NCBI GenBank assembly: GCA_001949185.1
Contig: BDGG01000001.1
Location: 7,092,325-7,156,324, forward strand
Source of the DNA: Ramazzottius varieornatus
Lineage: Eukaryota > Animalia > Tardigrada
DNA length: 64,000 nucleotides
Reading direction: 5' to 3'
Part shown: piece after piece, positions 112-59,157 of the stretch
Layout of the letters: each line of letters starts with the position of its first letter
How positions within the stretch are numbered: the first letter of the stretch is position 1
Made by a program: the position numbers and the translations under genes
The notes under the pieces: generated by a model
The model's input: only the letters and a program-made list of their open reading frames with translations
What the model was told of the DNA's origin: nothing
The model's database searches: none

Positions 112-3100
112 TGGACGATGAAGAGCAAGTCTTGCTGGAGCTAACGTACCCGGAAATAACCAGCATCAGTTGTGTCAAGCCCGAACCGCAGATCAGCGGT
201 GTCCGGCCACACGCCATACAGTTTAACTTACAAACTATCCGTGGCGACTTCACGTTCCGCTCCAGCAATGCAGAAGACATTCAAGAGCTAATTGCCTTCT
301 TCCTCGATGGACTGAAACGCCGCAGCAAATATTGCGTGGCCATACAAGACTATAAGGTAATCTACGCACGATCCACCTTCCCTTTACGAGCATATCCGAA
401 GCTCGAGCTCGCGGCTTCTGATCGAATTGATTCCATAATTTCATTTGAAATTGGATTGAAACCACGCCCAAGATCCGTTTGAGAAATTTCCGACCTAACA
501 ATGGCGGAAATTAATGACAAACCAGTTTTGAATTTATCTGGACCAAACTAACAGCCTCCAGATTGGTAAACTCAATGTAGGAAAAATGGTATGATGGCAT
601 GAATGCTCAATTGCTCATGCACTTAGCTGCTGATACTAAAGGAAAAACGCGCCAGAAAGCTGTATCGAGTCGATGAGGAAGTGGTGTAACCCAGTTGCAT
701 CACTACGATGTGCTTTTGAAGAGCTTTTGTTTTCCCATAGTGATTGTTCTTCAATGAGAGTGTTCCATGCTTTTTTATGTGGTTTGCAGGCGCCGAGTGA
801 GAGTGCGTCGTACTTGAGTTTCGACAAGGGTGATTTGATTGTGCTGGAGAACAACACCAACGGCGAGACGCTGATGAGCGGTGGTTGGTGTTACGGGCGG
901 TGTGAACGGACGGGCAAAGTCGGGGATTTCGTACCGGACTGCGTCTACCTTCTGCCGACACTGACTAAACCTGGTCCCGACTTGTTGACGCTCTTCACCA
1001 TGGATCGCATTTCCTTGATGGCGATCAGCAACAACATTCACGTTCAAGTATGTTTACCATGAGTCAATTGCCAATATTGGATATTTTACCCGTTTGGAAT
1101 ATTTCCTCATTTTATGGTGGATTAGGACGCGCAAGCCACGAAGTTTCACACGTTGGAACAGTACGCCGCCCAACACTTCCGCCCAGCCACCAAAAGAGGG
1201 ACAGTGATGAAGGGTATGGATACGCTAATATCGGTGAGGAAGAAGGACAAGGAAGAACTGTGGAAGCATACTCGGGAACCCATCAAGTTACCGCTATTGA
1301 GAAAGCTCGAACCGAAAGACGAGCTGAGCCAAGAAGCAGTGGTGGCCTTCCAGTCCATCATGAAGTATATGGGCGACCTACCCAGCAAAAAGCCCAGGTA
1401 GGAATTCCCACAATATACTGATTGAATCAGTTGAAAATTTAAAGCTGTAAATTTGAGTGTGGGGGATCGGCACCTCAAGTGGCGCAGTCTTCCAGGCAGT
1501 CACACTGAGAAAGTGCGCCACTCGAAGAAAACGATCTTGTCCGTTTCTTTTGCCGGCTTCCCAATTATTACAAAAGTATTGGACGATCAGTGCATTTGAT
1601 ATGGAGTGTTGTTTGTGCAGAATTTCCAACGAACTAACGGATCAAATTTTCGAGAAAGCATTAAAAGAGGACCTTCTGAAAGATGAAATCTACTGTCAGA
1701 TTATAAAGCAGCTGACGGACAATCGTAGTCGAGTGGGTGAAGAACGTGGATGGGAACTGTTGTGGCTGGCCACAGGTCTCTTTGCGCCCAGCGAGACTCT
1801 TCTGAAAGAATGCATGCACATTTTGAGGTCGCGACAACGCCATCAGATCGCTTTGGACTGCATCAACCGCTTGCAGAAAACGAAAAAGTCGGGAACCCGG
1901 AAGTATCCACCGCATCAGGTCGAAGTGGAGGCTATCCAACACAAAACCACTCAGATATTCCACAAGGTATCGAACTGAATCCATCTGTTTCTCAAGTCAT
2001 CGGCAGTTCCCACTAAATCTCACGCGTTCTTTACAGGTGTATTTTCCTGACGATACCGATGAAGCCTTCGAAGTGGACTCCAGCACCAAAGCCAAAGATT
2101 TCTGCCACAGCATATCTCACCGCTTGAATCTGAGGTACTACTGTTTTGGTCTTAGCATAACTCGTATTAGAAAAAAGTAGAGCCAGCGCGCCTTAACAAA
2201 GGTTTTGTCAACAGGTCTTCCGAAGGCTTCAGTCTGTTTGTCAAGATTGCCGATAAAGTAATCAGTGTGCCTGAAACGGACTTCTTTTTCGACTTCGTCC
2301 GGCATCTCGTAAGTCAAAACCGCAAAGTCAGAAACGAACACTCGATTCATCGAACGACAGATTGATTCCTAACTGAATAATTTCCCTGTGTAGACTGACT
2401 GGATAAAGAAGGCCAAGCCGTCTCGGGATGGCGTCATCCCCCAGTTCACTTACCAAGTCTTCTTCATGAAGAAGCTGTGGACCAACACGGTGCCCGGAAG
2501 AGACCGCCAAGCTGACCTCATCTTCCACTACCACCAAGAGCTACCAAAGTACCTCCGCGGCTTTCACGACTGCAAGAAGGAAGACGCCGTCCGGCTAGCC
2601 GCTCTGATCTTCCGCGCAAAGTATGGTGAGAATAAGAGCGACCTCCAGGCCATACCCAACATGCTCAAAGGTACGTCCACCTCTCTCCTGTCGAGTGCCA
2701 ATCTAACTTTAGCATTGCAGAGTTACTTCCGCTGGACCTCATCCGAGCGCAGAGCGCGTCGGACTGGAAACGGTCCATCAGTGCGTCTTTCACCGGCGAC
2801 TCTGGTTTGACTGAGGATGAAGCCAAAGTCGCCTTTCTCAAGTACATCTACAAGTGGCCGACCTTTGGTTCGGCCTTCTTCGAGATACGGGTAAGAAATG
2901 AGAGCTCGACAAACAAAAGCGACCAGTTGACCTTTCTCAAGTGGCGCACTTTTCCCGTAACATTGGCTGGAAGCATGCGCCACTTGGGAAGAATGATCTG
3001 GTCGAGTTGGTTTGCTGAGCTTCCAAGTACTGCCATAACACCCATCACGTACAGTGAGGTAACTTCCTGGTTTGATGGTTGCAGCAAACGACCGACTCAA

Positions 3101-3564
3101 ATTACCCGGAAAGACTGCTGCTGGCTATCAACAAGAATGGTGTCAACCTGATCGATCTGGCCACAAAGGTAAGGAAGGAGTGAAGTTGGTGTTGACTTTA
3201 CTGGTCAGTGCATCGCAAACAGGAAGCATTGGTACATCACGCTTTGGCTCTTGTTCGTAGAAAATCCTGGATGTCCATCCTTTCACCAGGATATCCAATT
3301 GGAGCAGCGGCAACACCTTCTTCCATATGACCATCGGCAATCTAGTTCGCGGCACGAAGCTCTTGTGCGAAACTACCCTGGTCAGTATTTCTCGTCCTCA
3401 GATAATTATTGGAAAAACACTTGTAGAAAATTATCCCAGTCAATCTGAGTGCTGTCATATTTCAGGGTTACAAAATTGATGACTTGCTGACCAGTTATAT
3501 CGGCCTGATGCTTCAGCAGATGAATAAGCAACGAGTGGTTGCACGTCCTCGTATCGACGAGTAA
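112..3564 (+). CDS. MYO7A: Unconventional myosin VIIa, C-terminal tail exons (end of FERM1, SH3, MyTH4, FERM2); 5' part lies outside the window
   Basis: Spliced exons give [18 protein letters not shown]3 ([20 protein letters not shown]), MyTH4 ([31 protein letters not shown]), and FERM ([69 protein letters not shown]). Stop TAA is at 3562-3564; introns are GT-AG. Confidence 0.95.
1476..1561. repeat. Family A hairpin, 1 unit (myosin intron)
   Basis: TGGCGCA at 1480, N27, TGCGCCA. Confidence 0.9.
2903..3024. repeat. Family A hairpin, 1 full-length unit (myosin intron)
   Basis: AGCTCGACAAACAAA..CAAGTGGCGCA(2942)-N27-TGCGCCACTTG..GTTTGCTGAGCT. Confidence 0.93.
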
Positions 3565-4004
3565 ATCCTTTTCCAGTTCCTTCTATTTCCCTTTCCGTGT
3601 TGAAAAATTGTGACCAATGCCACGCGGTATCTTCCGGTGATTTTTATTGTCTGTTTTTGTGACGATTTGTCTCTGGGTTTAATATTGCTTTTCTTTTTTA
3701 TTTATTTGTTTTCATGGGATTATAACGGTATTTTTTGAATGAACGCATAACAAACAAAAAAACAGCGCCGGGATTACAGGAAAAAACAAAAAGGGGAACC
3801 AACAAAATTATCCAGCTGCAAAAGTGAGTATTGGTTTCGGTACGCGAATGAGAATTGAGGATTGGGTGAAAGAAAACTTCTTTGATCCGTCTGTAATTTT
3901 AAAACGAGTGCACGGTGCTTACGGCTAATACGTTAAGAGGGGCAAGCTGGAATGCGAGTAGGTTAAAATAAAAAATGAAAACCCAAAAAACTCTTCTTTC
4001 TCCT

Positions 4005-7000
4005 TTATTCGTCATCTTCTTCATCACCATCAGCGCCATCTTCGTTCACCACCGCCGTCTTCTTGCATCGCCCCTTGCGTTCCCTCTTGTGGAACTTGCG
4101 CAGTCGTCTGGCCCATTCGTCCTTCCAGTCAATGACGGTGCTGTGGTTGTCGATGACCATCGAGGTCTTGTGATCGGGGAGGGTTCGTCCGACCTCGGTG
4201 GAGGTGTCGGGATAGCGACCCATAATGAGGTACTGCTGGCCTAGGCGAACCTTCGGACACTTGCAGCCGTAGTCCGACTGGTGGAGGTAGATGTACTGGT
4301 CTCCCTTGACGATCTTGCCCATTCCGCGCTTGTAGATGCTGATGACGTTGACGGTGAAACGAACCCAATCGCCTTGAGTATCTCTCGATAAAAGCTGAGC
4401 TTGAACCACTGAACACACAAAAAGCTAGTTGGTATCAATAGGGAATACCGTTGCAAAATGTTCACGTGAGAAATCGGCTCAATCTCAAGTGGCGCACGTT
4501 TTCTATGGCGATGGCTGAGAGCGTGCGCCAGTGGGGACAACAGCTCGGGCGAATTCATTGCCGATGTACCAGATTTCACTTTGGCTTACCGAAATCGCGT
4601 TTGCAGTACTTTTTCTGGTTGACCCGTCTTGACATGACTTCACAAGGTCCACACTTTTCTGTAAAGATAGAAAGATGGACTTGTTAGACGTGATTTACAC
4701 CATTTACTACAGTGATCAAAACAGGAATATGGAGTGGGTCAAGCAGGTAGTCTGTTTGCCCACGTGCATATGAGCCTTTGATCGACTATTAGATCCGGTG
4801 AAAATAATTCATATTTTTGTGTACTGAACAATACATGGAAATCAGCGTTATCACAAGTGGGAAAAGTTGGATTGGTCCTGTGTGAGAAGCTTATGTGGGA
4901 ATTAGTACGGAACTGACCATCTTGCGGGGCACCACCATCCGTTGATTGAATGCCATTCATGTCCAGCATTGATGTCCGGGGAATTTCTGTGGCCACATCA
5001 AGCACAAAGATTAAACATGGTAGTGGAACGATGCTGGAACGTGATGGAGAAAGCTTTCGGGGCTTACTGATGCATGGCGCAATGGGTGAGCGACTTTGTT
5101 GATATCCTTTGGCGCATTGATTGCATGTCAACCCAATGACACCTTCCTTGCAGGCACACTGACCACTGGTCTGGTTACAGGTCTTGCCTAGAGCTCCGAT
5201 GGGATGGCAATCGCATTCTGGAAGAAGAAAAACTGTGTGATGGGAAGAGATGGGTCCTAGGCATAAAAACTTGAAAAGATCCTTTTGTCAAGTGACGCAT
5301 GCTTACAGCCGATAACACTGACAAAGTGCGCCACTTGAGAAACGAAACTCGACACCATCGTTCTTTCTTCCGAGTGGCGTGAGCTTTCAGCCTATAACAC
5401 TGAAATCGTGCGCCACTAGGCGAAAAAGTCTTGTGTGGTTCGTTTGCCGGGCTGCCGGTTGAATGGAGAAGTAGATACTACTGTAGTTGTAAATTTGAAG
5501 GAAGGAAGTAGTTCGTACCCGTGCACACTTTACGATGAGTAATGGGCTTGCTGGCGTCCCTGTAAAAGCCCTCTTTGCAGTAATGGCAGTAGCGTCCCGC
5601 CGTGTTGTGCCGGCAGTTCATGCAGACTCCGCCGCTCTTCCGTCCCGATAACTTGTACAGCTCCATGCTGAACTGACAGCGCCGACTGTGCATGTTGCAG
5701 TTACAAGCTGCAAAAATTGTAGAAAAAGGTGACGTTAGGTACGTTTGGTGACGTTAGGTAATGTTCTACGTTTGGATGTAAACGAACCTCGATGAACGCA
5801 AAATTAGGAGAAAACAAGATTCCAATAAGAGTCGTGAAAAACAGCTTTGTGTAACTCTTGCGCAAAACTGACCATTGAGTCTAGGTTCGTGAGATGATTT
5901 CGTGTGGACAGGAACGGTATTCCGGAAAGATTTACGGTGTAGAAAAACGATGTGAAGTTTATTGCAAAACACTAAATCTGTCATTGAATAGATATTTTAT
6001 AGTGTCATATGGAGTGTTTTTTAGTTAATGGCGGAAACTGACAGGTCGTTGTCGTACGTTTCACTTCTCGACTTTCAATATAAATGTCGTCGATCCCAAA
6101 AGGGGGATTTAGCTGAAGCGGCGTATGGGTTCGCGACGCAGTGGGGGCCGAGGATATACAGTGCGTAGACGCTTTTAGGGAGTAATGGCTAATGAGAGAC
6201 ATGGTCACGCTCTGCATGTGTCAATGACTGATGGATGCCCAAGACAGTTTCAAGTTGAGTTCCTAACGATTTATGCAGAATAGGAGGCTTTGGGCGCGAG
6301 GCTTATTAGGCTTGATGGTGGCGCACCACTTTGTAAAGTGTCCAAATGAAATGGTAGCGGAGATGGAAAGACCGACGCAAATGGCTCGTTTTTGCCACTT
6401 TTTCATTAGAGACAAACGACCAAATACCCTCGTAATAAACATTATTTAAACTCCACTCCGTAATGACAACTTTCAAGGCTTACTCTGTTTCCCAAACATA
6501 ACCCGTTTGACGTTGTTCAGGTTAAAATCTAGACCCGATAAATGCGCTGCAGCTTTCTGGTTTGATTGAAAGCATGGTAGAAAAATGGCCCTGCCAAACT
6601 TGCCAAAACTTCATTCTTTCCACTCATCGTTTTCTCCGAAAATGCAGTATCTTTATACCTGAACGACAAGTTTAAGACTTCGAGAAAAGGGTCACTATTT
6701 TACATCGGCAGGGTGTTTCACGTTTTGGAATATTCAAAGTCTTGGAGTATTTTTTGAAAATTATTAATATTAACCAGCGGAAGGAGCCATGTATCGAAAA
6801 GCAATATGAGCAGCTGCTGGGAAATTAACAGGATGATGAATCAATTTAGGTGAAATGTATGATGGCGGTTAGCTGAAGTGGATCCTTGGCTTTTGTATAC
6901 ACACTTGAAAGGAGGCTGGACAATATGGGCGTTTGGGGCTCTACGCCTATTTTCGAATACCACGTGCACAGTCCAAGCGTCCAAACCAAGCACTGTAACC

Positions 7001-10000
7001 ACATTTACCGTAGACGGGCTTGCGAGAAGCATAGGCAAAATTAGAGGAAGCTCGAATGGTGGTATGCGTCGTTGCCGCCCATTATGCTTCCCCCAAAGTG
7101 CCACACATAAATTAAACAGGGGGCCATTGTTCCCCACTCCGCAGTTAGCCTACATTGGTCCTGTCCTTCAGACTCACAAGCGTTTTTGCCCTATTCAATC
7201 AGGACAATACAGACTATTTGTTGGAACTCCAGGGAAGCAACACCTGGCCTGTTATTCTCTCTCTTTCATATCCTTCGAGTACCGTGGATGGGCCAGACAA
7301 GACACCCACCGCACACTTCTTCCCTCCTCGAGAGACCTACTTGAAGTATTAAAGGCGCTCAAGGTAACCTCCCTGGAAGACGTGATAAGCCAAATCCGGC
7401 TTTGAAAAAGATCTCGTGGTCCAGATAATTCCTTATCGAAGACCTGAAGTCCTTACGCTAAAATGTTCAGCCCAAAACAAATCACTGTTCTCCAGCCACA
7501 GGACTTTGGTCGGGGTATTTGATGGTCACCTGCCGCCGCGCGTAAAGCTCGAACGCTAAAAGTTATCAAAGCCCTTCTTTCAGTACATTCCGCTCACAAA
7601 ATTCTCAGAAGACCCACCATAATATTACCATTATTCCCGCGTGGCTTTTACGCTGAACGGCGGCATTTTTTCTAATAGCTAGCACACAGCAACAACATAA
7701 GCAGCCATGTGTGAATGTGTGCAAAGATGCAATGGCCAAATTGATCCATAAAAACCGGCAATGGGTAAACGAGGGAAATCAAATGAGCGGAATGTAATTG
7801 AAAGAATGTTTGAGTGCGTTAATTAGCGGCGATATTTCGGCCATTGACTAGCCGTGAATAAACACATTCGCTGTATCGACCATCAGTGCCGGTCTACGGC
7901 ATGCAAGAACAGTTAACGTTTGGGGCAGACTTGTCTTTATCGCCGTTAACAACACCTTTCTTTGCGATCATCGCACCGGGTGGCCCTTCTCCCTCTGCTC
8001 CAACCTTCCTTCCGCTAATTGCCTACCAGACGACAAACCGCGCACAAACAGCATGTGTGTTCTGCCCTTTTGTTTCACATGGACAGCATCGTTCACTTCC
8101 TCGTCCACGACGATGACCTTTCCCCACATGAATCAGGCTATATCTGGGAGCTATGCAAACAACTCAACCAGATCGTTTTCTGAAGTGGCGCACCCTTCTA
8201 GCCAATAATGCCAGAAAGCTGCGCGACTTGGAAACTCGACATAATCGCTTTTCCCAAGTGGCGCACGGTTTCGGCCGACGACACTGGAACCATGCGTCAC
8301 TTCGGAAGAGCTTGGCTTTCGTATCTTTTGCCACAACTTTGGAATTTTGTTAGGTGGTGGCTCAATTTTCAGATGGAATTTTTTGGTTGATAGATACATT
8401 TAGAACAGTGATGAAGTGTGTCTGCATGTATAATGTAATGTTAATAAGTGGAGGAGAGTGGATAATCCAGTGAGAAATGGGATTGTGTTGAGTATGTCGA
8501 GAATCGAATCAAGCCGTTAGCGTTTCGTCTGGATGAAGTTCAGGGGTCAAAATGCTTGCAGTGCCGAATACCTGTAAGCCTCAAGTCTTAATCTGTTTGT
8601 CTTGTCCTCGGCTTAAAAAGGGCCGTGTCGGCTTAAAAGTGCCAGTGACTTTCAAGTACCGCGTCAAATTGGACATTGTAAACTACCACATATCTTTGCC
8701 ATTCTCCAGTGAGCACTCAAGTCATGGCCACTTGATATTGAACGGCGTATTTCACCCCTAGCCTGCCTCAAGACTTTCTCGCGTTTGTCACGTTTCTCCA
8801 TAAATAAATGTGTCGTTACAATGGTTAAGGCTTTGACCACATTACTCCGCAAAGCCATCTATCCGAAGGAGCCTGTCTTGATATCCAAACTTCGTACTCT
8901 ACACATAGCGGGACAAACATAACAGAGAACTAAACCGATCCATCTTTCCGACATCGGTTTCCACCCTTCGGCCAAACCGTTAACTATGAAAACAGTGGCC
9001 AGAGCCGCCCGAATTTCTTTATAACGTCTTCGCGGCACAGTTTGGTCCTCCAAACATAAGGCTAAGTTTTAGAAGAGTGGCAATCGAAGTTGAATGTGTG
9101 CGACGGAAACAATCCAAATAGAGCGGTTACTGTAGGAAAAGGTAGAACAGTTCCCGCATTATTTTCCATGCCGACGTCTGTCCGAATCAAGCAGTCGAAG
9201 AATCTCGTATTCGTCAAAAAGCTCGAAGTCTGTGCCGCGAGGCAGAATTCGTTTTTACCGGTACCAAAATTGGAAGCTGGTGTTCGCGGTGGCAGTACCG
9301 GTTGTTCCTGAGAGTCAACACACGAAAGGCTGGGTCTAAGCTGTATGCTTCAACAGGAAAGACAGCACAATGCAAAGAGTATCTAGGCACACATTGGGAA
9401 CACTGAGCGGTTACAGTCATCCATCAATTCTGCCTGATTGCCATGTTTTGTTATGCTCTCGCGAGTAGCGGCTTGAAGTATTTTCCATAAATATCCGTGT
9501 CTTTCTGGCCATTTTCTCCTTCGATTACATTGCACACTCAACATGTCGGCCTTCTGTTGAACATTCTACCGTATTCCTACAGATTCATTTCTGCCGTCTG
9601 TCAGCATTGCAGATGCATAAATCTTTCCTGCAAACCTTTTCGTCCTTTGCACAACAACCTTTTGATGGCAGATGCCGGCCTCCATAAACGGTAAACGCCC
9701 TTCTGTGTGAAGAAAGTAACCTTCGCCTGCATTGTTCGCAAGCTTTACCATGCTTCTTTTCCCTTTCAATCAAAAGCTGTAAATCTGCCACATATCCGAA
9801 GAAATGTAGCACGTCTCAATCTGACAAATTACCCAGCTCAGCCACTTGAGCACGCAAGTGACTTCAAAGAACCAGACAAGTGACATCTTTATATTCATGA
9901 AGATCGACACCGAAAAAGAGTAAAACGAGACATGGATGCGCATATGTGCCTTCTGGATTCTTCAGTCTTGCAGGTTACGCTTGACAGCTTGACGCGTTCA

Positions 10001-12535: not shown

Positions 12536-12774
12536 CCCTTTCTCTCACAGTAAATCCCCATTGCCCGCGCTAGATAAACAATAGAGCGAGCCTTCCGACC
12601 ACCAAGGCATTAGCCCAGATTGCTTTCCACAAGTCGTACAAGTCTACAAAGTAAAAGATCCTTCCCTTATTAAATTAGCGAGAAGAATGAACAGCTTGAA
12701 GTTAATCAAAGAGGCAAAGAGCACAAAAACTTTTGGCGTTCGATCGCCCAAAGTGTGAAAACCATCAAACGAAC

Positions 12775-12890
12775 ATCGGAAAATGAACTGAAAATAATTA
12801 TCATCCCAAGTGGCGCACAGTTATGTTGTTAGCGGCTGAGAGCGTGCGCCATTCGGAAAAACCATCTGAGTGAATCCGTTGGCCGAAGTC
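12775..12890. repeat. Family A, 1 unit (upstream of the netrin ATG)
   Basis: Core at 12811, N27. Confidence 0.88.
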
Positions 12891-14111
12891 CTGAACATCA
12901 CAGTGTCATAGAAAACCTTAAGAAGACTTAGGTTCAAAGTTCTTAACGAACAATCATAACAGAACGCAAAAATTTCAGCGCCACATATTTTTCGAAATAT
13001 TTCAAGTTTCAAGCTTACGAAACAAAGTCAAGGAAATCTACTTCTTTGAACGAGGAAGTAGAAATTTCCCAAACCTTACAGGATATCGGATTCTTGGCCC
13101 GTAGGAATTTAACCCGCTTTGTGTGAATAATTAGTCCGCAAAACGATATCAGAAACTAAACAAACACGGAACACGCCGCGGCTTTTGGTCAAAATGGTCG
13201 GATAATCAGTAAGCTTTGACACATAAATTGACAGAAGATGAACGGGCGCGATAAAGTGCTATGCTACACTAGGCCGCAAATGAAAATGATCCCGACAAGG
13301 AAGCGATCATCGAAAGAGGGGGATATCAGATGAGATAAGATAAAGTGCATTAAACACCGTTAAATCGTCTCAACCTTAAAACGCGGTCCCGAAACTCTTC
13401 AATCGGCCAATCTGTAAACTGCTCCACCAGATCCGATACGATACGATACGAAACACATACACCATATCTCCATCGACACCATCCAAAGTATGGAGTCGTT
13501 GACGTATCGGAAGCCACTGCTAAACTTTCCTGCTTTGTGGTGTTACTGTACTTTGTACGAGACAAAGACAAAGAGGCCCCTTTTCCCCCAACTGGTTATG
13601 GGAGCCGAGTACAGGCGGAGGTTTACTGAAGTGCACTGAACGCTGAACGGGACACTCAACCCAAAGAATAGACACAATCAAGCGTACGTTCTCTGCCCTC
13701 CACTTGCTTGCCTCCGTCCCTTGTGGTTGTGCGCAGTGACCATGCATGGACCACTGGACGGCAGGCAGCCACCACCGCGACAGCTGGCCGTAATGGGCAA
13801 AGGCTACACGCTAATACGATGCCACGGATAATGATGTGCCCTACTAGGGCGCAACGACGTCACCAGCCTCCACAACCCATAAAAAAATCAAATACTGTAC
13901 AACCGTGTCTCTGATTTCAAGAACTATTTAGCATGCCCCTGTTGGTCTTGCTCCCTTCACCGGTATCGTAACGAAGTTACGGAGTGTTGCCACATTACCT
14001 ATCAGTTCTTAAATATATAAAATGGCTAGACACATGGAATAATTACTAAAAGTCGATTGATATTGAAGTGATTTCAAAACCATGCAGCCTTTTTTTCCAG
14101 GAAGTTCCGTT

Positions 14112-23593: not shown

Positions 23594-23846
23594 TTCTGGC
23601 TCATTAAATTCGAGATATTTTCATGAGCGAAACCGTCGTAGCGAGAACTTCATTCTCTCCAACGTTGGCTTCTTTCTTGTGTTACTGTTGAGTCTGCAAA
23701 CTGTCACGTTTCGCAGTAACGTAATGCATAAGGTAGTCTGGAAAATAGAACAGTGAAAATTCGTACCGATAAAATCGAAAGTTCTTCTGAACAAATAGTA
23801 CGAAAACTATTGAAAGAAAAGCTTCGAACTGATGAATAAAAATAAT

Positions 23847-30881: not shown

Positions 30882-31074
30882 GAACACAAGGACAAACTAC
30901 CATAAGCAGCTCCTTCGTCAAGACTTGAAACATACTGAATGTATACTGTACGTGTTCAATCCACAAGTTTTTCATACCTACCAAATTTGCTTATCGTTAC
31001 ACAGTCGTCTAAATTTATTGTGCGTGGTAGTACAATGTAGTGTTACGGAACGCGGGCGAATGAAGTTATAACCG

Positions 31075-31170
31075 GGTTTTGTCACCTCAAGTGGTGCACG
31101 TTGCCATTGTAACCGGCTGCAAGACTGCACCACTTGAGAAAACGATCTGGCTGAAAGCGTTGGCCCATCT
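31075..31170. repeat. Family A, 1 unit between the convergent LIM and LU genes
   Basis: TGGTGCA(31092)-N27-TGCACCA. Confidence 0.85.
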
Positions 31171-31293
31171 CCCGTATATCAGTTTTTCCCATCTGGCTTT
31201 TTGTTTTTCAGCAGCGGCTGAATAGATGTTGCTCAGTTTCTGCCTGAAGAGGCCATTGGTGTACATTTGACAGATGTTAGTTAAAACCTTAGT

Positions 31294-46300: not shown

Positions 46301-46953
46301 TAGCCGGATCGTCCTTCTGCTTGATGAGATCGTTGCAGGTGTTAATGATCTCGAACAAGCCCACCTACCACGAAAGCGATTTGTATTCGTACGATAGACG
46401 AAAGCTCGGCAAACAATCCCGTCCAGATCGTTTTCCAAGTGGCGCACTTCTTACGCTAATATAAACGAGCACGTGCGCTACTCGAACAAAATTCGACGGG
46501 ACTGATTTTCCAGTTGGCGCACGCTACCAGTCAGTAACACTGAAAACGTACGCCACTTGGGAAAACATTCTTGCCAAGTTTTTTCAAGCGATGCACGTTT
46601 TTGGTGTTACTGACTAGAAACGTGCGCCACTTGGGCAGACGATCTGGTCAAGTTTGTCTGCCGATTTCCTAGACAGCTTTTCCGTGGTTGAGACTAACCG
46701 AGTCGCCCACGGCGAAGAGTGAAGCAAAGCATCTGGCCAGGTAGTGTCTGATGGGAGGACCAGGTGTCGACAGCATCTGTCTGATTAGCTGTTCCTGTAG
46801 TTTCTTCTGAGAAGACTTGATGTCGGAGCGGTTGACGACGTGCAGTATCTTGTTGAGATGCCGCAGCCATTCCAGGACGAAGATGGCTTTCTCAGATTCC
46901 GGACGGAGCTGGTGCGCCGTTTCGTTGAGCAACAAACTATTGGATTGTTCCAT
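34364..46953 (-). CDS. HEATR5B: HEAT repeat-containing protein 5 (HEATR5A/B, Laa1/SOAP-1 family), multi-exon
   Basis: N-terminus SLLLNE..FVLEWLRHL..DIKSSQKKLQEQL; YEKLGRMVGRSY; LLLWRNSFPRS; LRCAAGETLGRLAQVV; SRDVVTRTGH; VQVWALHALYLIADSGGPMFR; LHLPDLVRMAFMAAT; ILEQFQANVGAALRP; C-terminal PSIKLK. Confidence 0.93.
35327..35440. repeat. Family A, 1 unit (HEATR5 intron)
   Basis: Core at 35364, N27. Confidence 0.85.
36070..36185. repeat. Family A, 1 unit (HEATR5 intron)
   Basis: Core at 36109, N27. Confidence 0.88.
37510..37690. repeat. Family A, 2-unit array (HEATR5 intron)
   Basis: Cores at 37548 and 37622, both N27, period 74. Confidence 0.88.
38841..38890. repeat. Family B dyad, 1 unit (HEATR5 intron)
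   Basis: ACCTACATAC-N30-GTATGCAGGT. Confidence 0.8.
39890..39960. repeat. Family A, 1 unit (HEATR5 intron)
   Basis: Core at 39913, N27; the spacer is close to consensus. Confidence 0.88.
41250..41363. repeat. Family A, degenerate unit (HEATR5 intron)
   Basis: Decayed cores at 41283, N26, with a recognisable right arm. Confidence 0.7.
41897..42035. repeat. Family B dyad, 2 units (HEATR5 intron)
   Basis: GCCTGCATAC(41897)-N30-GTGAGCAGGT and ACCTGCCTAC(41986)-N30-GTATGCAAGT. Confidence 0.75.
42518..42644. repeat. Family A, 1 full-length unit (HEATR5 intron)
   Basis: Core at 42561, N27; preceded by a 22-bp direct duplication (42474-42495 / 42498-42519). Confidence 0.9.
43043..43233. repeat. 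Family A, 2-unit array (HEATR5 intron)
   Basis: Cores at 43081 and 43154, both N27, period 73. Confidence 0.9.
43907..44184. repeat. Family B dyad, 3 units plus a possible decayed fourth (HEATR5 intron)
   Basis: ACCTGCATAC(43907)-N30-GTATGCAGGT; ACCTACGTAC(44071)-N30-CTATGTAGGT; AACTGGATAC(44135)-N30-GTGTGCATGT. Confidence 0.78.
44708..44815. repeat. Family A, 1 unit (HEATR5 intron)
   Basis: Core at 44742, N27. Confidence 0.88.
44934..45082. repeat. Third hairpin or MITE-like element with ~37-bp inverted arms (HEATR5 intron)
   Basis: TGCTTCATGAACTTCGCGCAGCACGTGATCATACGCG (44945-44981) versus CGCGTATGATGACGTAATTCGCGAACTTCATGAAGCA (45039-45075). Confidence 0.75.
45838..45945. repeat. Family A, 1 unit (HEATR5 intron)
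   Basis: Core at 45866, N26. Confidence 0.88.
46403..46669. repeat. Family A, 3-unit array (first coding intron of HEATR5)
   Basis: Cores at 46440, 46515 and 46589, all N27, periods 75 and 74. Confidence 0.92.
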
Positions 46954-50609: not shown

Positions 50610-53600
50610 ATGGAGTCCGGTATCGACGACTCGCACAAGGGACATCGCAAGCCGCACGGAGGACGAAAGGCCGAGAAGAAGGAGGAATCTCGCCTGAAGA
50701 CCGATGTCCCGCTCCAGAAGCAAAAGCACAGTGAAACGGCCAAGCAGAGGAACCCCAAAGCCTTCACGTTCCAGTCTATTGTGAAAGCTGAACGTACTTT
50801 CCGTCGGACGGCCGACGTCAAGGAAAAGAAGACACGACTACCTGAGGTGAAGCAAAAGCAGTTGATTTCATTTCAATGGCGCTTGACGTCACGTGCTGTG
50901 AGGTGCTGCACGTCTAATCGAATTGCGATATGGTGACGTAAGGTGCCTGTCTCGATTTGTAGATTGACCGGACGCCCGAGCTTCCTCCCCCGTACGTCGT
51001 AGCCGTCGTCGGTCCACCAAAAGTCGGCAAAACCATCTTGATGCAATGTCTCATCAAGTCCTTTACACGAAACAACATCAACAACATTCGAGGTCCCGTG
51101 ACGTTGGTATCAGGGAAGAAGCGTCGGATAACACTGATAGAATGCAACAACGATATCAACGCCATGATCGATGTCGCCAAAGTGGCCGACCTCGTCCTGC
51201 TTCTCATCGACGCCAAGTTTGGCTTCGAGATGGAGACGTTCGAGTTCTTAAATATCTGTCAAGTACACGGCTTCCCAAAGATCATGGGAGTGCTAACACA
51301 CCTGGATATGTTCCGAGAGAGCAAAGCTATGCAGAAAACGAAGAAGAGGTTGAAACAACGCTTTTGGACGGAGATCTATCAAGGCGCGAAGCTTTTCTAC
51401 ATTTCTGGGCTGAAGAATGGCGAATACATGAGGAGAGACGTCAAGAATTTAGGTATAGTACATGGACTGCTCGGCAAACAAACTCGGCCAACAAACTCGG
51501 CCAGATTGTTTCTACCAGTGGCGCACTTCGTCAGCCACTAAGACCGAAAGCATCGCCACTTGGAAAACAATCTTGCCGAGTTTGTTTGCAAAGCTCTCGT
51601 ATGTCGGTTGTCTGTAATGTAACAGCTAGCACGGTATGTTTTACAGGAAGATTCATCTCCATTCAGAAATTCCGTCCGCTACAGTGGCGTTCCACGCATC
51701 CCTACATTCTGTCAGATAGAATGGAGGATGTGACGGACCCGGAAAAGATTCGGGCACATCCAAAGCAGGATCGAGATGTATGCTTTTATGGATATGTCAG
51801 AGGCGCTCAGTTGAAAGACAAATCGTTCGTCCACATCGCAGGTAAAAAACGTTTCCACTTTTAATAGAAGCTCGCTTTTCAAACTATAGATCAGTTTTCG
51901 GTGACTTACATACATACATACGAGGTACGTATGCCGAATGGACGGCTCTAGACTATAGTCTATACAAGGTGCGTGAAAGAGGGACAGATATAGCCTCACA
52001 TAGGATCGTTTCTGTAAGTGGCGCACGCTTTCGGCCAGTAACACAGAGGCTGTGTGCCACTTGAGTAAACAATTTGCGTGAATTCGTTTGCCGACACCCC
52101 ATTCTGTTCTCAGACTTCCGAGGAGACAAAGCACACATTTTTACGTTTCTTTTCTTTTCCCAGGTTGCGGTGATTTCGCCATCGACAGCGTCACACTCAT
52201 GAAAGATCCCTGTCCACTTCCGGGTGCCGAGAAGAAGCGTTCGTTGAACGAGAAGGAGAAGCTCATCTACGCACCACTGTCCGGTATGCGTGGGACCACG
52301 TACGACAAAGATGCCATCTACATTGACATGGGCAGCAACTACAACGCGGGCAACAGGAATGCCTACCAAGGAGAACGGAAGCTGACGGCGGCAGAACAAC
52401 TCATGGAGACCTTCAAAGACTCCAGTGAGATGATCGACGAGAAGCTCAAGACGTCACAGTTCAAGCTAACGTCAGAAGCAAAAGCTGTGACGGGTGAGGA
52501 GTTCGACGCGAATACGAAGATGATCGAATCGAGAAGGGAAGAAGTCGTGGAGGACGGTGGCAGGAGACGACGCCGAGTCGTCTTTGACGATAAAGATATG
52601 GACGACGGGGAAGATGGTGAAATGGACGACGACGAAGCAGAAGAAGAAGATGAAGACGACGAGGAGGAAATGGCTGGTCGACCTGGTAGAATGTTCGCCG
52701 GTGCGTAAAGTCACCAAAATTGCTTTTCGCCGAACTGTAAGATTCAGACAAAGAAATCCTGTCAAAATTGCACTTAAAAAACACGCACAGGAAAGTTTTC
52801 GTCGGTGTAGTTCTCGTACCAAACTGAATGACACGCGTGTTTTGACTAATGCGGTTCGACTTCCGGTGCGCAAACTGAAAAACGGCTTAAACGGCTTGAC
52901 CGTCTCTAGCTCAGCTCGTGCACGGAAAGCTGCGTTGTACTGGAGAAAACCGTCAAGTGTTATCACAGAGTGCGCAGCTTAAAACCATGAATGCCAATAG
53001 GGTGAGGATCTGTAGAACCAGTCTTGTGCGTGTTTTGCAGGTGAAGATTTCGAAGGGGACGGTGAAGGGGACTTTGAGTTTGATGACGACTCGGAAGACG
53101 ACGAAGGTGTGAGTTCGCGGTGGAAGGTCGACCTCAAGTCAAGAGGTGCGGAGCTTTACAGCGGACGACTGTCTTCGGTGGACAAGCTCAAGAAACTCAT
53201 CTATGGACAGCAAGAAGAAAAGAACGACGGGGACGATGAAACCGAAATCTTAGGTGGTCTTCTGCGGGTTGTGCAGAAGAACACGCAGGACATGGCCAGC
53301 AAACGAGGGAACAACATGCTGGAAAGTACGAGATTCCACTCGGATGAAAAGAAGAGTGGTGGTGAAATGGTGGATGACTTGCGATCGAGGCTGAAGAGTC
53401 TCTTCTTGACGACGAAAGTCGGGGAGGATGACGAAAGGGAAGGCGTGAAGAAGAACAGAAAGACTGGGGAGGATGACGATGAAGACCTGTATGGAGACTT
53501 CGAAGACCTGGAGCAGAAAGGCGGAAGTCTGTTTCCGAAAAGCGCAGCAAAAGAAGACGACGGCGATGACATGGACGAGGTAAATTTCACTCAGAAACAA

Positions 53601-56168
53601 GCTGAAAGAAAATCTTAACCTACGAAAACTCGAACAAAATACCGGTACCATTATTCGCATGAATTGGGAGGCCGGCAAACGAAACGTACCAGATCGCTAC
53701 ATCAAGTGGCGCACACTGTGAGCCAATGACATGTAAACGTGCGCCACTTGAGAAAACGATTTTGTACGGTTCGTTTACTGGTCTTTCGGCCGTGTTTTTT
53801 TTCTGGTCTTGAATTCTCATTTCCGTTGTAATAAACCATTTTGTGTTTTAGGACGAAGAAGGAGATGAGGAGGAAGTAGACGCAAAAGAAGAGAAACCAG
53901 AAGTAGGAAAAGCTCCTCCTGCCGGAAATGAGAACAGTCGAATGGCAAAGATCATGGAAAAGAAGCGGAAACTGAAAGAAGCTTTCGACGCAGAGTTCGA
54001 TGAGGAAAAGACCATTGGCAAGAAGACTTACTACGACACGCTGAAGGAAGATGTCGCGCATCAAGACCAGGCCAACCGTTCCGAGTTCGCCGGACTGGAT
54101 AACGAGCAGCGCATCCGCTACGAAGGCTTCCGCCCTGGTCTCTACGTCCGTGTACAGATCAACAAGGTCCCCATGGAACTAGTGACCAACTTCGACCCAA
54201 CGTACCCGTACTTGATCGGCGGTCTGCTGAGTCAAGAACAGAACATCGGGTTTGTACAGGTAAGAAGACTGCAAAAAATTATAGTATGCTGCGCGACAAC
54301 CACCTACATACATTTCATGGCCTGCGCTGTAGTTGCTGTATGTAGGTTCTTGATGATTTGACGGCTCAGTTATTCGGCTGTCAATGCGGCGCGACAGTCA
54401 CCTGGATACTGTGAACTAACGGCTTTTTCACTGAATGTGGTATGCAGGCTGTTGATGAACCGGTCAGAATGTCGTATCTTACTCTTTGCAGGTTAGGCTA
54501 AAGAAGCATAGGTGGTATCCGAGGATATTAAAGAATAGGGACCCGATGATCGTGTCGTTGGGTTGGAGAAGATTCCAGACGCTGCCAGTGTACTCTACAC
54601 AAGACCACAACATGCGGAACAGAATGCTGAAGTACACCCCGATGCACATGCACTGCTTGGCTAGCTTCTGGGGACCCATTACCCCACAAGGCACCGGTAA
54701 GAACTTTTGAAGGTATCTGGGCAGGCAAAATTTACCAGATTGTTATCTCAAGTGGCGCACAGTTTCGGTATCGTTGACCGGAAGCCTGCGCCATTTTGCA
54801 GTATAATTTTTATATCGAGCTTGGCCTTCCGAGTGGCGCACGTTTGCGTTGTAACTGAATGGTAGAGTGCGCCAGTTCGAAAAAGAGATCTGGTACATTT
54901 TGTTCGCCCAGCTCCCAGATTTTTTCTTGTTCGGGAATGGTTTTGACGATTTTTTATCATAGGTATGTTGTCGGTGGAAAGTGTGAGGACTGCCGGTCAA
55001 GAGACCGGCTTCCGCATAACCTCCACCGGTGTCGTCCTGGACTTGAACAAGTCCGTCGACGTCGTCAAGAAGCTCAAGCTGACCGGTGAGCCTCTCAAGA
55101 TCTTCCGCAAGACGGCCTTCGTCAAAGGTATGTTCAACTCGGCGCTGGAGATCAGTCGCTTCGAAGGTGCGGCCATCCGTACTGTCAGTGGCATCCGTGG
55201 ACAGATCAAGCGTGCCTTGAAAGAACCCGAAGGCGCCTTCCGCGCCACTTTTGAAGACAAGATCCTGCCCAGCGACATCGTGTTCGTCCGGACGTGGTTC
55301 AAGATCGACGTTCCACAGTTCTACAACCCACTGACCAACCTGCTGCTCCCGCATGAACAACGTCTACAGTGGCAGGTAAAAATTAAAAATAAGTGCTTGA
55401 GACAATGTTGTGCTAGAAATTCCGAAAAATTAACATCAAAACGAATCAGGTGGAAAAGGATCGGGACCTAGGCAAACAAACTCTATAGGTTTCGTTTTTT
55501 CAAGTGGCGCACGCTTCCAGCCCGTAACCTGAGAACGTGTACCACTGTGGACTGTAAACAAAATCGCTTTCCAAGTGGCGCACTATTCCAGTGTTACTGG
55601 CTAGAAGCGTGCGCCACTTGGGAAGACAATCTTGCCGTGTTTGTTTGTCGAGCTTCCAGATGAATGGTGGAAAAATCAGTAGGTTTTTTGATCGACTGGT
55701 CTGGACTGGTAGTGCTAAAATAGCTTGTTGCTTTTGCAGGGAATGAGAAGGGTCGGTGAGATCCGTCGGGAACTGGGCCAGAAAACCGAGCAGAACAAAG
55801 ACTCATTCTACAAGCCGATCGTCCGGAAAGAGAGAAGGTTCAAACCGTTAATTGTCCCACGCGATATCCAGAGCTCACTTCCCTACAAAGATAAGCCGAA
55901 GAACAGACCGAAGAAGGGTAAGATCCATCCGGATATGCAGAAGGTGGCGGTGGTCCTTGAGCCAAAGGAGAGGTCCATCGGGCAGATGCTCAAAGAAATG
56001 GAAGCCATCCATAAAGACAAGGCGACGAAACAGAAGAAAGACGCTGCTCAGAAGAAGGAAATCTATGTTAAGCAGAATGCGCTGCTGAAAGAAAAGTACG
56101 ATGCGGCGCAGAGGAGGATGAAGAAGGCGGTTTGTAAGAGACTCGATCGACGCCAAAGCAAGAAATGA
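50610..56168 (+). CDS. BMS1: Ribosome biogenesis GTPase BMS1, multi-exon
   Basis: [98 protein letters not shown]. Confidence 0.97.
51467..51598. repeat. Family A, 1 unit with a locally duplicated left end (BMS1 intron)
   Basis: Core at 51519, ~N26; the CTCGGC(A/C)AACAAA segment is duplicated. Confidence 0.88.
51980..52095. repeat. Family A, 1 unit (BMS1 intron)
   Basis: Core at 52019, N27. Confidence 0.86.
53666..53787. repeat. Family A, 1 unit (BMS1 intron)
   Basis: Core at 53707, N26. Confidence 0.9.
54302..54449. repeat. Family B dyad, 2 units (BMS1 intron)
   Basis: ACCTACATAC(54302)-N26-GTATGTAGGT and ACCTGGATAC(54400)-N30-GTATGCAGGC. Confidence 0.75.
54718..54917. repeat. Family A, 2-unit array (BMS1 intron)
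   Basis: Cores at 54753 and 54834, both N27, period 81. Confidence 0.9.
55470..55657. repeat. Family A, 2-unit array (BMS1 intron)
   Basis: Cores at 55505 (N26) and 55576 (N27), period 71. Confidence 0.9.
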
Positions 56169-56907: not shown

Positions 56908-57059
56908 GAGATAGAAATGTCCTTGAGAAGACGACTGCGATCGATGGAAACCTGCGAAACGGAGAAATTCATTCAAAGATCCACCAGCAACGTACTTCAA
57001 GGTGACAAGTTCTACAGTGAGGCCCACAATTCACTCTCACCTTGGGCTCTGAAGATCCT

Positions 57060-57500
57060 GGAAGAACTTAGAGGAAATCCGGGAGTCTGGAAGAAAAATC
57101 AAACGAAGGAAACCTTTTGCGGATAATCCGAAATTGAAATCCAGCTTTGAATTGAATATTTGACTGAGAACGACGAGTCGACGCAGAATCGTTACGTGAT
57201 CGTGTGACTCTACTCGTTCGATACGTCATCACACGTACGACTTGATTGCTTCTGCGAACTGGGTTGTACGACTGGTGAGATCGCCATTGCAGTGAGTCGA
57301 GTCACATACGAGTCACATCAAGTCGAAAACGACTGGGTAAATTGTGACATCACGTTCTGTTTTACATCAGCAGGCAGTGAACCGGGGTAGATGTCCGCTA
57401 TTCCGCTTGTCTTTCATACTGTAGACAACAAATTTCGTGTCTTCGTCCCGTTCAGTTCTCGTGTTCCTTGACGCTTCAGGTCTTTTGGCGCTATTTACGA
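57060..57500. promoter_or_regulatory. Probable bidirectional promoter, eIF1/RAD1
   Basis: Divergent ATGs are ~650 bp apart; the interval is CpG-rich with repeated GAGTC/GACTC words. Confidence 0.45.
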
Positions 57501-57554
57501 TTGTGTAGGTTGCTGTTTGTCTGTTCAACTGAGGGTAGAAGTCCTCCTTCGAAG

Positions 57555-59157
57555 ATGCCGGCAAGAAACAGCGAGATGCACGAGGAGCAGCGATCACAAG
57601 CGACCTCTGATGTTAACACCACCACTCAAGAAACCGTCCGTGATAGCCATCGCGGAGATGTCTTCATCGCCAAGCTGGAAAGCTCCAACTTAAAGACTGT
57701 CATTCGAATCTTAAAGTCCATTTCGTCCAAGAAGGTAGAAGTCCGAAAGCTCTTTTCTACAGTACTTGTTTTTCCGTTTTCCCTTAGTGCGCGATCTCAT
57801 CCGGGCATGGTCCCTGCTTTGCAGATTGCACACTTTCACGCTGTCGAGAGTGGAATCAAGTTCATCATACAAGAGCCTGGACGGTTTCAGATGACCGCTT
57901 ACTTGGCAAAGGAGCTGTTCGTCCAATATGACTGTCGGAAGGGTGAAGTGAGATTCAAAGTCAGCTTGGAAAATGTGTTGGTAAGTTCGAAACCAAACTG
58001 CCCTAGACGTCATAAGAGTGCACCGCTTTATGCTGGCTTTCGCCTACCAACTTGCCTCACCGCGATGATGTCTTGCGCCGCTTCGAATACCGTGCTTATG
58101 CTGTTTGCAGAATTCCCTTCAAATGTTTGTTGGTATTCACGGACAAGCCACCACGGCGCTCTTCACTTACAAGGGTGAAGGGCACGCATTAAAGATACAG
58201 ATCGAGGAGTCGGGCTTTCACACGGACTGTGAGATCAAGACTATCAACGTGGACGAGCTCGTGGAAGTTGACTTCCGGCACGAAGACCGTTTGTGTCGAG
58301 TGATCTGCAAGGTGCCCCAGTACTCCGTTATTCACGTTTTATTCGCGTACTTTCCTTGATAAAATTTTCTTCTCTAGTCTGATTGCATGAGGGACGCGTT
58401 CCAGAGTATCCTCTTCTGGCCGTCGACCGCAGTCACCATTAAAATGTCCAACAGAGCACCGTACTTCACTCTGGAAACCGTTTCCGACCAGGGCACTTCC
58501 GCCGCCACAATAAGCAAAGGTATTGTACCTAGAATAACGTTAATTTAATGAAGAAGGAACAGACTTGAATCGCACGTCGAAAGGAAGTGGGATGTGGGCA
58601 GATGAACTGAAATTGTTTTGTCACATGGCGCATGTTTTCGTTGCTTTGGGCTGCAGGTGTGCGCCACTTGGGAAAACGGTCTGGTTCGAATCATTTGCCC
58701 ACGTCCCAAGTGATACTTCACTTCCGGTTTACACTCTGATCGCGTTTGCGTTGCAGATTCAGACTACATCGAAAATTTTGAGTGTCCGAATGATATCAGG
58801 TTCGGGTACGTTACTTTTGATATCAGCGTCGTGATATTATTATGGTGTCGGACATGGGTGAGCATGCTGAATAACTCTTGTGGCTGTGGGTTGTTCGTAG
58901 TTACCGTCAATTGATGATCAAGCAAGCCCAGAAGGCCCTCGCGATCTCCGAGAAGACGTCTATACGTATTGATGGTCGCGGAGTACTTCTGATGCAGTTC
59001 ATGATCCGGACGGAAGAAGAAGTTACTACTTTCATTGAATTTGGGGTACGCTGACAGTCAATCGCTTGACAATTTACTTCAAGCCTTAACTGTAAGCTTT
59101 ACTGGGCCGTTTAATTTGCAGTGTGTACCGCATATCGATGTGGACGAGCACGAGTGA
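57555..59157 (+). CDS. RAD1: Checkpoint clamp (9-1-1) subunit RAD1, 7 coding exons
   Basis: Spliced product contains YKGEGHALKIQIEESG..CEIKT, SDCMRDAF, APYFTLET, DSDYIENFEC and KALAISEKTSIRIDGRGVLLMQFMI..FIEFGCVP, collinear with RAD1/MRT-2. Confidence 0.87.
58588..58708. repeat. Family A, 1 unit (RAD1 intron)
   Basis: Core at 58626, N27; outer arms GGGATGTGGGCAGATGA / TCATTTGCCCACGTCCC. Confidence 0.9.

What the first reader, a model, noticed from the sequence alone, without database searches (positions are those of the whole stretch)
1476..58708. Dense intronic system of fixed-geometry dyads: TGGCGCA-N27-TGCGCCA in ~120-bp hairpins (Family A)
Seen: 41 units at 29 loci (about one locus per 2 kb). 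27 loci are in introns of eight unrelated genes (myosin, netrin, PERK, RAD9, ECI2, LACTB, HEATR5, BMS1) plus RAD1, and none are in exons. The approximate consensus is GGAAGCTCGGCAAACAAACTCGACCAGATCGTTTTCCCAAG-TGGCGCA-CGCTTTCAG[CCAGTAACA]CTGAAAACG-TGCGCCA-CTTGGGAAAACGATCTGGTCGAGTTTGTTTGCCGAGCTTCC. The spacer is exactly 27 nt in 33 units, 26 in six and 20 in one; one unit lost a core. Spacer and outer-arm sequences are heavily diverged, while the AAGTGGCGCA core and the spacer length are retained. I found no consistent target-site duplication. Established: palindromic MITEs populate invertebrate introns, but they normally conserve their termini; bacterial REP doublets (REPIN/BIME) show this inverted-doublet, fixed-spacing, tandem-array layout. 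Inference: the uneven conservation points to an actively maintained two-half-site protein-binding geometry, or a REPIN-like mobile unit, rather than a neutrally decaying MITE. Possible roles include chromatin or chromosome organisation, or co-transcriptional pre-mRNA hairpins.
Basis: partly seen in the sequence, partly recalled or inferred. Interest (0 to 1): 0.9.

Follow-up and report, generated by a model that had tools for sequence, protein, structure and literature searches.

The report
Known tardigrade MITE, protected inner dyad
The repeated hairpins are copies of an already catalogued 123-bp miniature transposon of the tardigrade Ramazzottius varieornatus, ordinary in most respects, except that two inverted 10-bp boxes and the distance between them have decayed three to four times more slowly than the rest since insertion. 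That pattern suggests thousands of retained protein-binding sites.

Summary
I find 39 units at 29 loci in the window. The genome holds 3,765 exact dyads against 3 for the control, about 13,000 units in all.

The element is not new. It matches ramVar1-7 (DNA/Sola; 123 bp, 4-bp TSD, 56-bp TIR) in the published TardigraTE library. This scan has already met the family on other windows of the same genome.

It is a MITE from one ancient burst. Copies have 4-bp ANNT target duplications and the copy tree is star-like. The genome has no RAYT gene, so the REPIN idea fails. The arms show no compensatory changes, so a hairpin role is unsupported.

- When copies are found by one half, or by the outer arms alone, the box AAGTGGCGCA still matches at about 0.90 per site. 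Arms and spacer match at about 0.65-0.70.
- That is 3.5 times fewer mismatches than base composition predicts.
- The 27-nt spacer is free in sequence but has about 3 times fewer indels than the arms.
- A genome-wide TSD clock dates insertions to the arms' divergence (0.26-0.28), not the box's (0.09). The protection therefore acted after insertion.

Best reading, unproven: weak purifying selection on a dimeric protein-binding dyad. The protein is unknown, and the CTCF-core resemblance is speculative.

The parts
1439..1561 (.). single unit, flanks AATT/AATT
2901..3023 (.). single unit, both boxes perfect
4449..4571 (.). single unit
5252..5456 (.). two-unit array, centres 82 bp apart
8145..8340 (.). 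two-unit array, centres 73 bp apart, 32-nt shared link
12770..12892 (.). single unit
16369..16491 (.). single unit, perfect TSD AAAT
17863..17985 (.). single unit
18753..18875 (.). single unit, 26-nt spacer
23048..23235 (.). two-unit array with opposite loop orientations; second unit has a 20-nt spacer
24414..24536 (.). single near-consensus unit of the GGGACATG terminus type; used as genome query
27843..28047 (.). two-unit array, centres 82 bp apart
31051..31173 (.). single unit
35323..35445 (.). single unit
36068..36190 (.). single unit
37507..37703 (.). two-unit array, centres 74 bp apart
39872..39994 (.). single unit with both boxes perfect and degraded arms
41241..41363 (.). degraded unit (2 and 3 box mismatches), found only by the HMM
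42520..42642 (.). single unit
43040..43235 (.). two-unit array, centres 73 bp apart, opposite loop orientations
44701..44823 (.). single unit
45824..45946 (.). single unit, 26-nt spacer
46399..46670 (.). three-unit array, centres 75 and 74 bp apart
51478..51600 (.). single unit, found by the HMM
51978..52100 (.). single unit
53665..53787 (.). single unit, 26-nt spacer
54712..54915 (.). two-unit array, centres 81 bp apart
55464..55657 (.). two-unit array, centres 71 bp apart
58585..58707 (.). single unit, perfect TSD ACTT

Best explanation
The units are fossil copies of a palindromic, non-autonomous DNA transposon (MITE) of Ramazzottius varieornatus. It is the same family as, or a sister subfamily of, the published ramVar1-7 (DNA/Sola).

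Shown: the family spread in essentially one ancient burst to about 13,000 units. It inserted at A-N-N-T targets with 4-bp duplications and is now immobile, with decayed termini.

Shown: since insertion the arms, the spacer sequence, the termini and the TSDs have drifted about 27-30% from their starting state. The 10-bp box AAGTGGCGCA in each arm (element positions 39-48 and 76-85) has drifted only about 9%. The 27-nt distance between the 7-mer cores has suffered about three times fewer indels than the arms. The slowdown is uniform over copies.

Inferred: the two inverted boxes at fixed spacing are the half-sites of a dimeric sequence-specific DNA-binding protein acting on double-stranded DNA. 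The box probably began as the subterminal transposase-binding site of the long TIR. Weak purifying selection (about 4Nes = -2.4 per site, taken from the rate ratio of 0.24) has kept site and spacing at thousands of loci.

The protein and the function are unknown.
For: Identity:
- The published consensus has the same length, box, spacing, TSD and TIR.
- The genome is 55.84 Mb in 200 contigs.

The box conservation is real and unbiased:
- In the unascertained partner half, the box matches at 0.90, arms at 0.65 and spacer stem at 0.67 (n=134).
- Detection by an arms-only HMM gives 0.88-0.91 for the box.
- The base-class expectation for box mismatches is 0.311 against 0.089 observed, a 3.5-fold difference (CI 3.0-4.2). 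The box CpG mismatches at 0.049 against 0.366 for arm CpGs.

Spacing: the spacer has the modal length in 87/102 units, against 52/77 for a 25-nt arm interval (Fisher p=0.006).

Single burst and uniform constraint:
- Per-copy mismatch counts have Poisson-like variance in box, arms and stems, with no correlation between regions.
- Only two subfamilies are detectable.
- The nearest genome-wide relatives of three copies are 77-83% identical.

Protection acted after insertion:
- Among copies with exact termini, 8/40 (7/28 in narrow geometry) with one flank AAAT have AAAT on the other flank, and 0/10 for AATT.
- The maximum-likelihood TSD divergence is 0.26-0.28 (support 0.17-0.40), the same as arm A/T columns (0.276).
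- The likelihood ratio is about 840 against a box-level age.
- The terminal bases match at only 0.53-0.60.

The box occurs essentially only inside units (131/140).
Against:
- All column statistics rest on 354 kb (134 units), about 1% of the family. Only the counts and the TSD clock are genome-wide.
- The in-sample TSD distribution is overdispersed. Taken alone it could not exclude a subset of copies with well-kept TSDs.
- Purifying selection on about 26,000 boxes is a heavy claim. A protein-dependent or sequence-dependent reduction in mutation rate would give the same uniform slowdown.
- No autonomous partner was found, so 'transposase-binding site' is an inference by analogy.
- Part of the arm length variation could predate insertion.
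Confidence: 0.55

Rival explanations
1. Transposition-competence filter. The box is the transposase-binding site. Only lineages with intact boxes kept moving, so boxes look young while arms carry older lineage mutations. On this reading there is no host function and no constraint after insertion.
For: - Subterminal transposase-binding boxes are known (P element and En/Spm, from my own knowledge).
- Both subfamilies share the box.
- The in-sample TSD counts alone allow a mixture with well-kept TSDs in about 35-50% of copies.
Against: - The genome-wide TSD clock gives 0.26-0.28, not 0.09, with a likelihood ratio of about 840.
- The termini needed for cleavage are the least conserved columns.
- Box mismatches do not depend on TSD state (1.71 against 1.94 per 20 sites, p=0.39).
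- Box mismatch counts are Poisson-like, not geometric as turnover would give.
Confidence: 0.15
2. Mutational cold spot without function. The box mutates less, either because of its sequence context or because a bound protein shields it or directs repair. Selection plays no part.
For: A uniform, partial slowdown in every copy is what a rate effect predicts.
Against: - Base class does not explain the effect; box CpG, G/C and A/T columns are all protected.
- The boundaries are sharp: 0.94 falls to 0.72 and then 0.44 within 3 nt.
- The spacer has a normal substitution rate but a low indel rate. A cold spot does not predict this, whereas a spacing constraint does.
- GC-biased conversion would not protect the A/T box columns.
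Confidence: 0.15
3. Structural hairpin or cruciform element. The unit works as a folded RNA in pre-mRNA or as extruded DNA, and the G+C-rich box is the nucleating stem.
For: The founder was a perfect palindrome, and most copies lie in transcribed introns.
Against: - Agreement between left and right arms equals chance in arms and stems, so there are no compensatory changes.
- The stems next to the loop are among the most decayed columns (I_stem 0.50).
- Rfam finds no match.
Confidence: 0.04
4. Plain neutrally decaying MITE. The apparent core conservation comes only from finding copies by their core.
For: One earlier follow-up of this scan concluded that the copies evolve like surrounding DNA.
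Against: Half-site ascertainment and arms-only detection both give a box match near 0.9. The bootstrap CI of the ratio is 3.0-4.2.
Confidence: 0.04
5. REPIN/BIME-like unit mobilised by an HUH (RAYT) enzyme.
For: The layout of inverted doublets and short arrays.
Against: - Y1_Tnp has no match in the genome, while the controls ring.
- The copies have 4-bp TSDs typical of DDE transposition.
- The host is a eukaryote.
Confidence: 0.01

Closest known systems
ramVar1-7#DNA/Sola, TardigraTE library (Peona et al. 2024, Mob DNA, PMC11071193, supplementary file 3)
   Same: - 123 bp, marked complete, 4-bp TSD, 56-bp TIR.
- Identical box AAGTGGCGCA, a 27-nt spacer and the same terminal GGGAGCT.
- By eye, 48 of 57 half-consensus positions agree with the consensus of this region.
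   Different: - Nine arm and stem positions differ, so this may be a sister subfamily.
- The paper says nothing about uneven decay, arrays or target preference.
- The Sola assignment is not backed by a transposase there or here.
TE-borne binding sites of architectural or transcription factors, such as CTCF sites spread by SINE B2 in rodents (my own knowledge), and the Drosophila CTCF core AGGTGGCGC (Holohan et al. 2007, PMC1904468)
   Same: - One repeat family seeded thousands of identical protein-site candidates.
- The box shares 8 of 9 bases with the fly CTCF core.
   Different: - This is a DNA MITE, with an inverted pair at fixed spacing.
- The constraint is uniform over all copies.
- The mismatch falls on a strong CTCF position.
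- The motif has no sites outside the element.
- The excess of AGGTGGCGC is largely MITE variants.
- Binding is untested.
Subterminal transposase-binding boxes (the P-element internal 10-bp THAP site about 50 bp from the ends; En/Spm 12-bp TNPA motifs) (my own knowledge)
   Same: A short box about 40-50 bp inside a long TIR, distinct from the cleaved terminus and present as an inverted pair.
   Different: No transposase has been identified here. In those systems the boxes matter for mobility and are not known to be kept after the element dies.
Bacterial REPIN/BIME doublets
   Same: Inverted doublets of a short palindromic unit, sometimes in arrays, at high copy number.
   Different: No RAYT gene; TSDs are present; the host is a eukaryote with intronic copies; the unit is a TIR-loop-TIR MITE.

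Membership tests
MITE (non-autonomous class II element) | Short and non-coding, with terminal inverted repeats | tested here: met
   A palindrome of about 123 bp with arms of about 57 nt around a 9-nt loop.
MITE (non-autonomous class II element) | Target-site duplication | tested here: met
   4-bp register peak of 0.48 against a background of 0.26-0.29. A at -4 and +1, T at -1 and +4. 8/40 exact AAAT pairs genome-wide.
MITE (non-autonomous class II element) | High copy number, dispersed | tested here: met
   3,765 exact dyads and 11,175 box 9-mers on many contigs.
ramVar1-7 (TardigraTE) | Consensus similarity with the same length, TIR and TSD | tested here: met
   Compared by eye with the published consensus: 48/57 half positions, identical box and spacing.
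Sola superfamily | 4-bp TSD | tested here: met
Sola superfamily | Autonomous partner encoding a Sola DDE transposase with matching TIRs | tested here: inconclusive
   No half-element without a partner half appears in 354 kb. No Sola profile exists in the libraries on hand, and the genome could not be scanned for long copies.
REPIN/BIME | Cognate RAYT (Y1/HUH) transposase in the genome | tested here: not met
   PF01797 gives 0 matches, while the controls ring in 6 of 14 genomes.
Structured RNA or miRNA-like hairpin | Base pairs kept through compensatory change | tested here: not met
   Agreement between left and right arms equals chance. No Rfam match.
CTCF-type binding site | Match to the core AGGTGGCGC with upstream CC...AG | tested here: inconclusive
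   8/9 of the core matches. The upstream part is absent and not conserved.
CTCF-type binding site | Occupancy by CTCF | not testable with these tools
No ChIP or ATAC data are available.

The most novel reading that the evidence does not exclude
About 13,000 MITE-borne inverted box pairs, spaced roughly every 4-5 kb, form a genome-wide lattice of sites for one dimeric DNA-binding protein. Candidates are a domesticated transposase-derived factor, a THAP-type factor or a CTCF-like zinc-finger factor. On this reading weak selection has kept the lattice since an ancient burst, because together the sites serve a chromosome-scale function such as chromatin architecture or anchoring in an extremotolerant, very compact genome.
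Probability: 0.3. Interest if true: 0.85.

Novelty: new variant of a known kind. Interest (0 to 1): 0.55.

Why it matters
The repeat family itself is catalogued, so there is nothing new in the element. What is unusual is the pattern of constraint, which appears to be unpublished. It is uniform and acts after insertion. It covers two 10-bp boxes and their spacing in essentially every copy of a dead transposon, while the termini, arms, spacer sequence and TSDs drift freely.

If the constraint reflects selection, about 0.5% of a 56-Mb animal genome is a single repeated binding site of transposon origin. The tardigrade would then be a compact model for how a transposon burst installs a genome-wide protein-binding lattice. 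The dyad also gives a precise probe for finding the protein. If the cause is instead a mutational effect, it is a clean natural example of site-specific suppression of mutation.

Tried and rejected
I did not try again.
Column statistics therefore rest on 354 kb.
- In-sample TSD clock: the signal is overdispersed. A mixture with well-kept TSDs in a third to a half of copies fitted about as well as uniform decay. Genome-wide pattern counts settled the point.
- Nearest-neighbour searches for sibling copies: the best relatives are 77-83% identical. This is compatible with a star tree but not decisive on its own.
- Arrays as an in-place clock: adjacent units are no more alike than random pairs (spacer identity 0.577 against 0.582), so they give no clock.
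- Autonomous partner: none in the sampled DNA, none in earlier notes, and no Sola profile is available.
- Metagenome scan for relatives in other tardigrades: 84 contigs hold the two boxes, mostly 25 nt apart and many from gut metagenomes. None matches the family HMM, so they are unrelated.
- Literature search for the motif: only primers and other unrelated sequences.
- Canonical CTCF core AGGTGGCGC: 1,917 copies against about 470 for the control. Many of the listed sites coincide with MITE dyads, so this is no independent support.
- Rfam: no match.


Full report
WHAT IS THERE. The pattern TGGCGCA-N(15-40)-TGCGCCA occurs 20 times in the window and never in 100 shuffles. With one mismatch per core there are 34 units, 30 of them with a 27-nt spacer. 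Reading the flanks shows that each dyad is the centre of a palindrome of about 123 bp: arm 41, core 7, spacer 27, core 7, arm 41. The spacer is itself a 9-bp stem with a 9-nt loop. A half-element HMM plus alignment finds 39 units at 29 loci in the window and 53 more in the adjacent 200 kb.

The genome has 55,842,812 bases in 200 contigs. It holds 3,765 exact dyads against 3 for the reversed control. The 9-mer AAGTGGCGC occurs 11,175 times against about 500 for the control. With a 0.40 chance that a box is intact, this means about 13,000 units. Long ORFs of the window carry BMS1, HEATR5A, Rad1, beta-lactamase-like, Laminin_N and kinase domains. No unit overlaps these segments, but I did not map exons.

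IT IS A KNOWN ELEMENT. The curated TardigraTE library for Ramazzottius varieornatus (Peona et al. 2024, PMC11071193) lists ramVar1-7 as DNA/Sola: complete, 123 bp, TSD 4 bp, TIR 56 bp. Its printed consensus has the same termini, the same box AAGTGGCGCA and the same 27-nt spacer. By eye, 48 of 57 half-consensus positions agree with the local consensus. This scan has also met the family on other windows of the same genome. Three follow-ups reported a box that decays 3-5 times more slowly, and one called the element ordinary.

IS THE UNEVEN CONSERVATION REAL? I removed that bias in two ways.
- I detected one half with a half-element HMM and measured only the other, unascertained half (n=134). The box (columns 39-48) matches at 0.90, the arm at 0.65 and the spacer stem at 0.67.
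- I detected copies with an HMM of the outer arm alone, with no box columns. The adjacent box matches at 0.88-0.91 per site, and only about 5% of hits, mostly marginal ones, lack it.

Base composition does not explain the difference. Rates for CpG, other G/C and A/T columns outside the box predict 0.311 mismatches, and 0.089 are seen. This is 3.5-fold (bootstrap CI 3.0-4.2). The box CpG mismatches at 0.049 against 0.366 for arm CpGs. The edges are sharp: 0.94, then 0.72, 0.72 and 0.44 on the spacer side.

SPACING. Between cores with at most one mismatch, the spacer has its modal length in 87 of 102 units. A 25-nt arm interval between two landmarks is modal in 52 of 77. A 7-nt arm interval is modal in only 83 of 107 (Fisher p=0.006). 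The spacer is thus free in sequence but about three times less prone to indels.

BEFORE OR AFTER INSERTION? This is the crux. If only lineages with intact boxes kept transposing, boxes would look young with no constraint in place. Several results speak against that.
- Per-copy mismatch counts in box, arms and stems have the variance expected for independent sites of one age. For the box the variance is 1.88 against 1.65±0.24, and for the arms 13.4 against 11.1±1.7. The regions are uncorrelated. This fits one old burst with no young copies; the minimum non-box divergence is 0.15 and the median 0.30.
- Clustering finds only two subfamilies. The leave-one-out match rises from 0.685 to 0.73 and no further. 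The best genome-wide relatives of three copies are 77-83% identical.
- The terminal bases, which any DDE transposase must cut, match at only 0.53-0.60.
- The TSD is a clock that starts at insertion. Within the sample the 4-bp register is clear (0.48 against 0.26-0.29), with A at -4 and +1 and T at -1 and +4. However, the counts were overdispersed and could not exclude a well-kept subset.
- I therefore counted TSDs over the whole genome, using copies with exact GGGA and TCCC termini and an intact left box. Of 40 copies with AAAT on one flank, 8 have AAAT on the other (7 of 28 within narrow geometry). Of 10 with AATT, none does. A simple model gives a TSD divergence of 0.28 (support 0.19-0.40), or 0.255 if 16% of the termini are false. 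The arm A/T columns stand at 0.276 and the box at 0.09-0.11. The likelihood ratio against a box-level age is about 840.
- Box mismatches do not depend on TSD state.

The box has therefore been protected in place.

WHAT IT IS NOT.
- It is not a REPIN. The genome has no Y1/RAYT gene while the controls ring, and the element makes TSDs.
- It is not a conserved hairpin. The two arms of a copy agree no more often than chance (excess 0.03-0.05; the stems are slightly below chance), and Rfam finds nothing.
- It is not homogenised by conversion. Left and right boxes show no excess of shared variants, and the 10-bp block is far shorter than a conversion tract.
- GC-biased conversion would not protect the A/T box columns, which mismatch at 0.111 against 0.276 elsewhere.

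MECHANISM. The pattern is two inverted half-sites, insensitive to spacer sequence but sensitive to spacer length, slowed uniformly in every copy. This is what weak purifying selection on a dimeric protein-binding site predicts. The Jukes-Cantor rate ratio of 0.24 corresponds to about 4Nes = -2.4. A two-class model, with some copies frozen and others free, is excluded by the Poisson-like variance. A binding-linked drop in mutation rate remains possible.

The box probably began as the subterminal transposase-binding site of the long TIR. This is by analogy with the P element and En/Spm, from my own knowledge. It occurs almost only inside the element (131 of 140 9-mers; the rest are degenerate copies or chance). 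The protein therefore has no obvious older host sites.

The box shares 8 of 9 bases with the Drosophila CTCF core AGGTGGCGC. CTCF is inferred for the panarthropod ancestor. Against this, the mismatch sits on a strong CTCF position, the upstream half of the motif is missing, and the genomic excess of the canonical core is largely MITE variants. I treat this as a lead only.

ARRAYS. About 30% of units sit in arrays of two or three, with centres 64-88 bp apart (modes 73-75 and 80-82). They share a single link of about 32 or 41 nt instead of two full arms, and occur in both relative orientations (15 same, 6 opposite). Neighbours are no more alike than random pairs. The arrays are therefore as old as the family. 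Their origin is unexplained.

LIMITS. The metagenome hits were unrelated. Column statistics come from about 1% of the family, in one 264-kb region plus 29 similarity-selected loci. The comparison with the published consensus was made by eye.

Noticed in passing
window 5252-5456, 8145-8340, 23048-23235, 27843-28047, 37507-37703, 43040-43235, 46399-46670, 54712-54915, 55464-55657: Arrays of two or three units share one link of about 32 or 41 nt (an inner arm flanked by CTTGG...CCAAG) instead of two full arms. In the 73-75-bp class the boxes fall on a lattice of about 37 bp. Neighbouring units are no more similar than random pairs, and both relative orientations occur. The origin of the arrays is unexplained.
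   Followed up: partly
L051-L134 (metagenome contigs): The same two 10-nt inverted boxes, mostly 25 nt apart, recur in 84 metagenome contigs, many labelled human gut. None matches the tardigrade family HMM, so this is an unrelated, probably bacterial, palindrome. I did not examine them further.
   Followed up: partly
L025:1564 and L031:1564 (G000 C4, about 134 kb apart): Two units are 94% identical outside the box, far above any other pair (the next is 83%). This is probably a segmental duplication rather than recent transposition. The flanks were not compared.
   Followed up: no
arm columns 8-9, 15-16, 21-22, 30-31, 49-50 of the element: CpG columns outside the box have decayed more than other columns (0.366 against 0.28-0.32), mostly by C>T and G>A changes. 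This hints at mild CpG hypermutability in this genome.
   Followed up: partly
window 1-64000 versus C1:6892325-7092324: The window carries about twice the unit density of the adjacent 200 kb (39 units in 64 kb against 53 in 200 kb). Its density of exact dyads is about 4.6 times the genome mean.
   Followed up: no
window 16492-16560 and 23236-23300: Low-complexity runs lie directly beside units: an AT-rich 'tattata' repeat after the unit at 16430, and a GTT microsatellite after the array at 23174.
   Followed up: no
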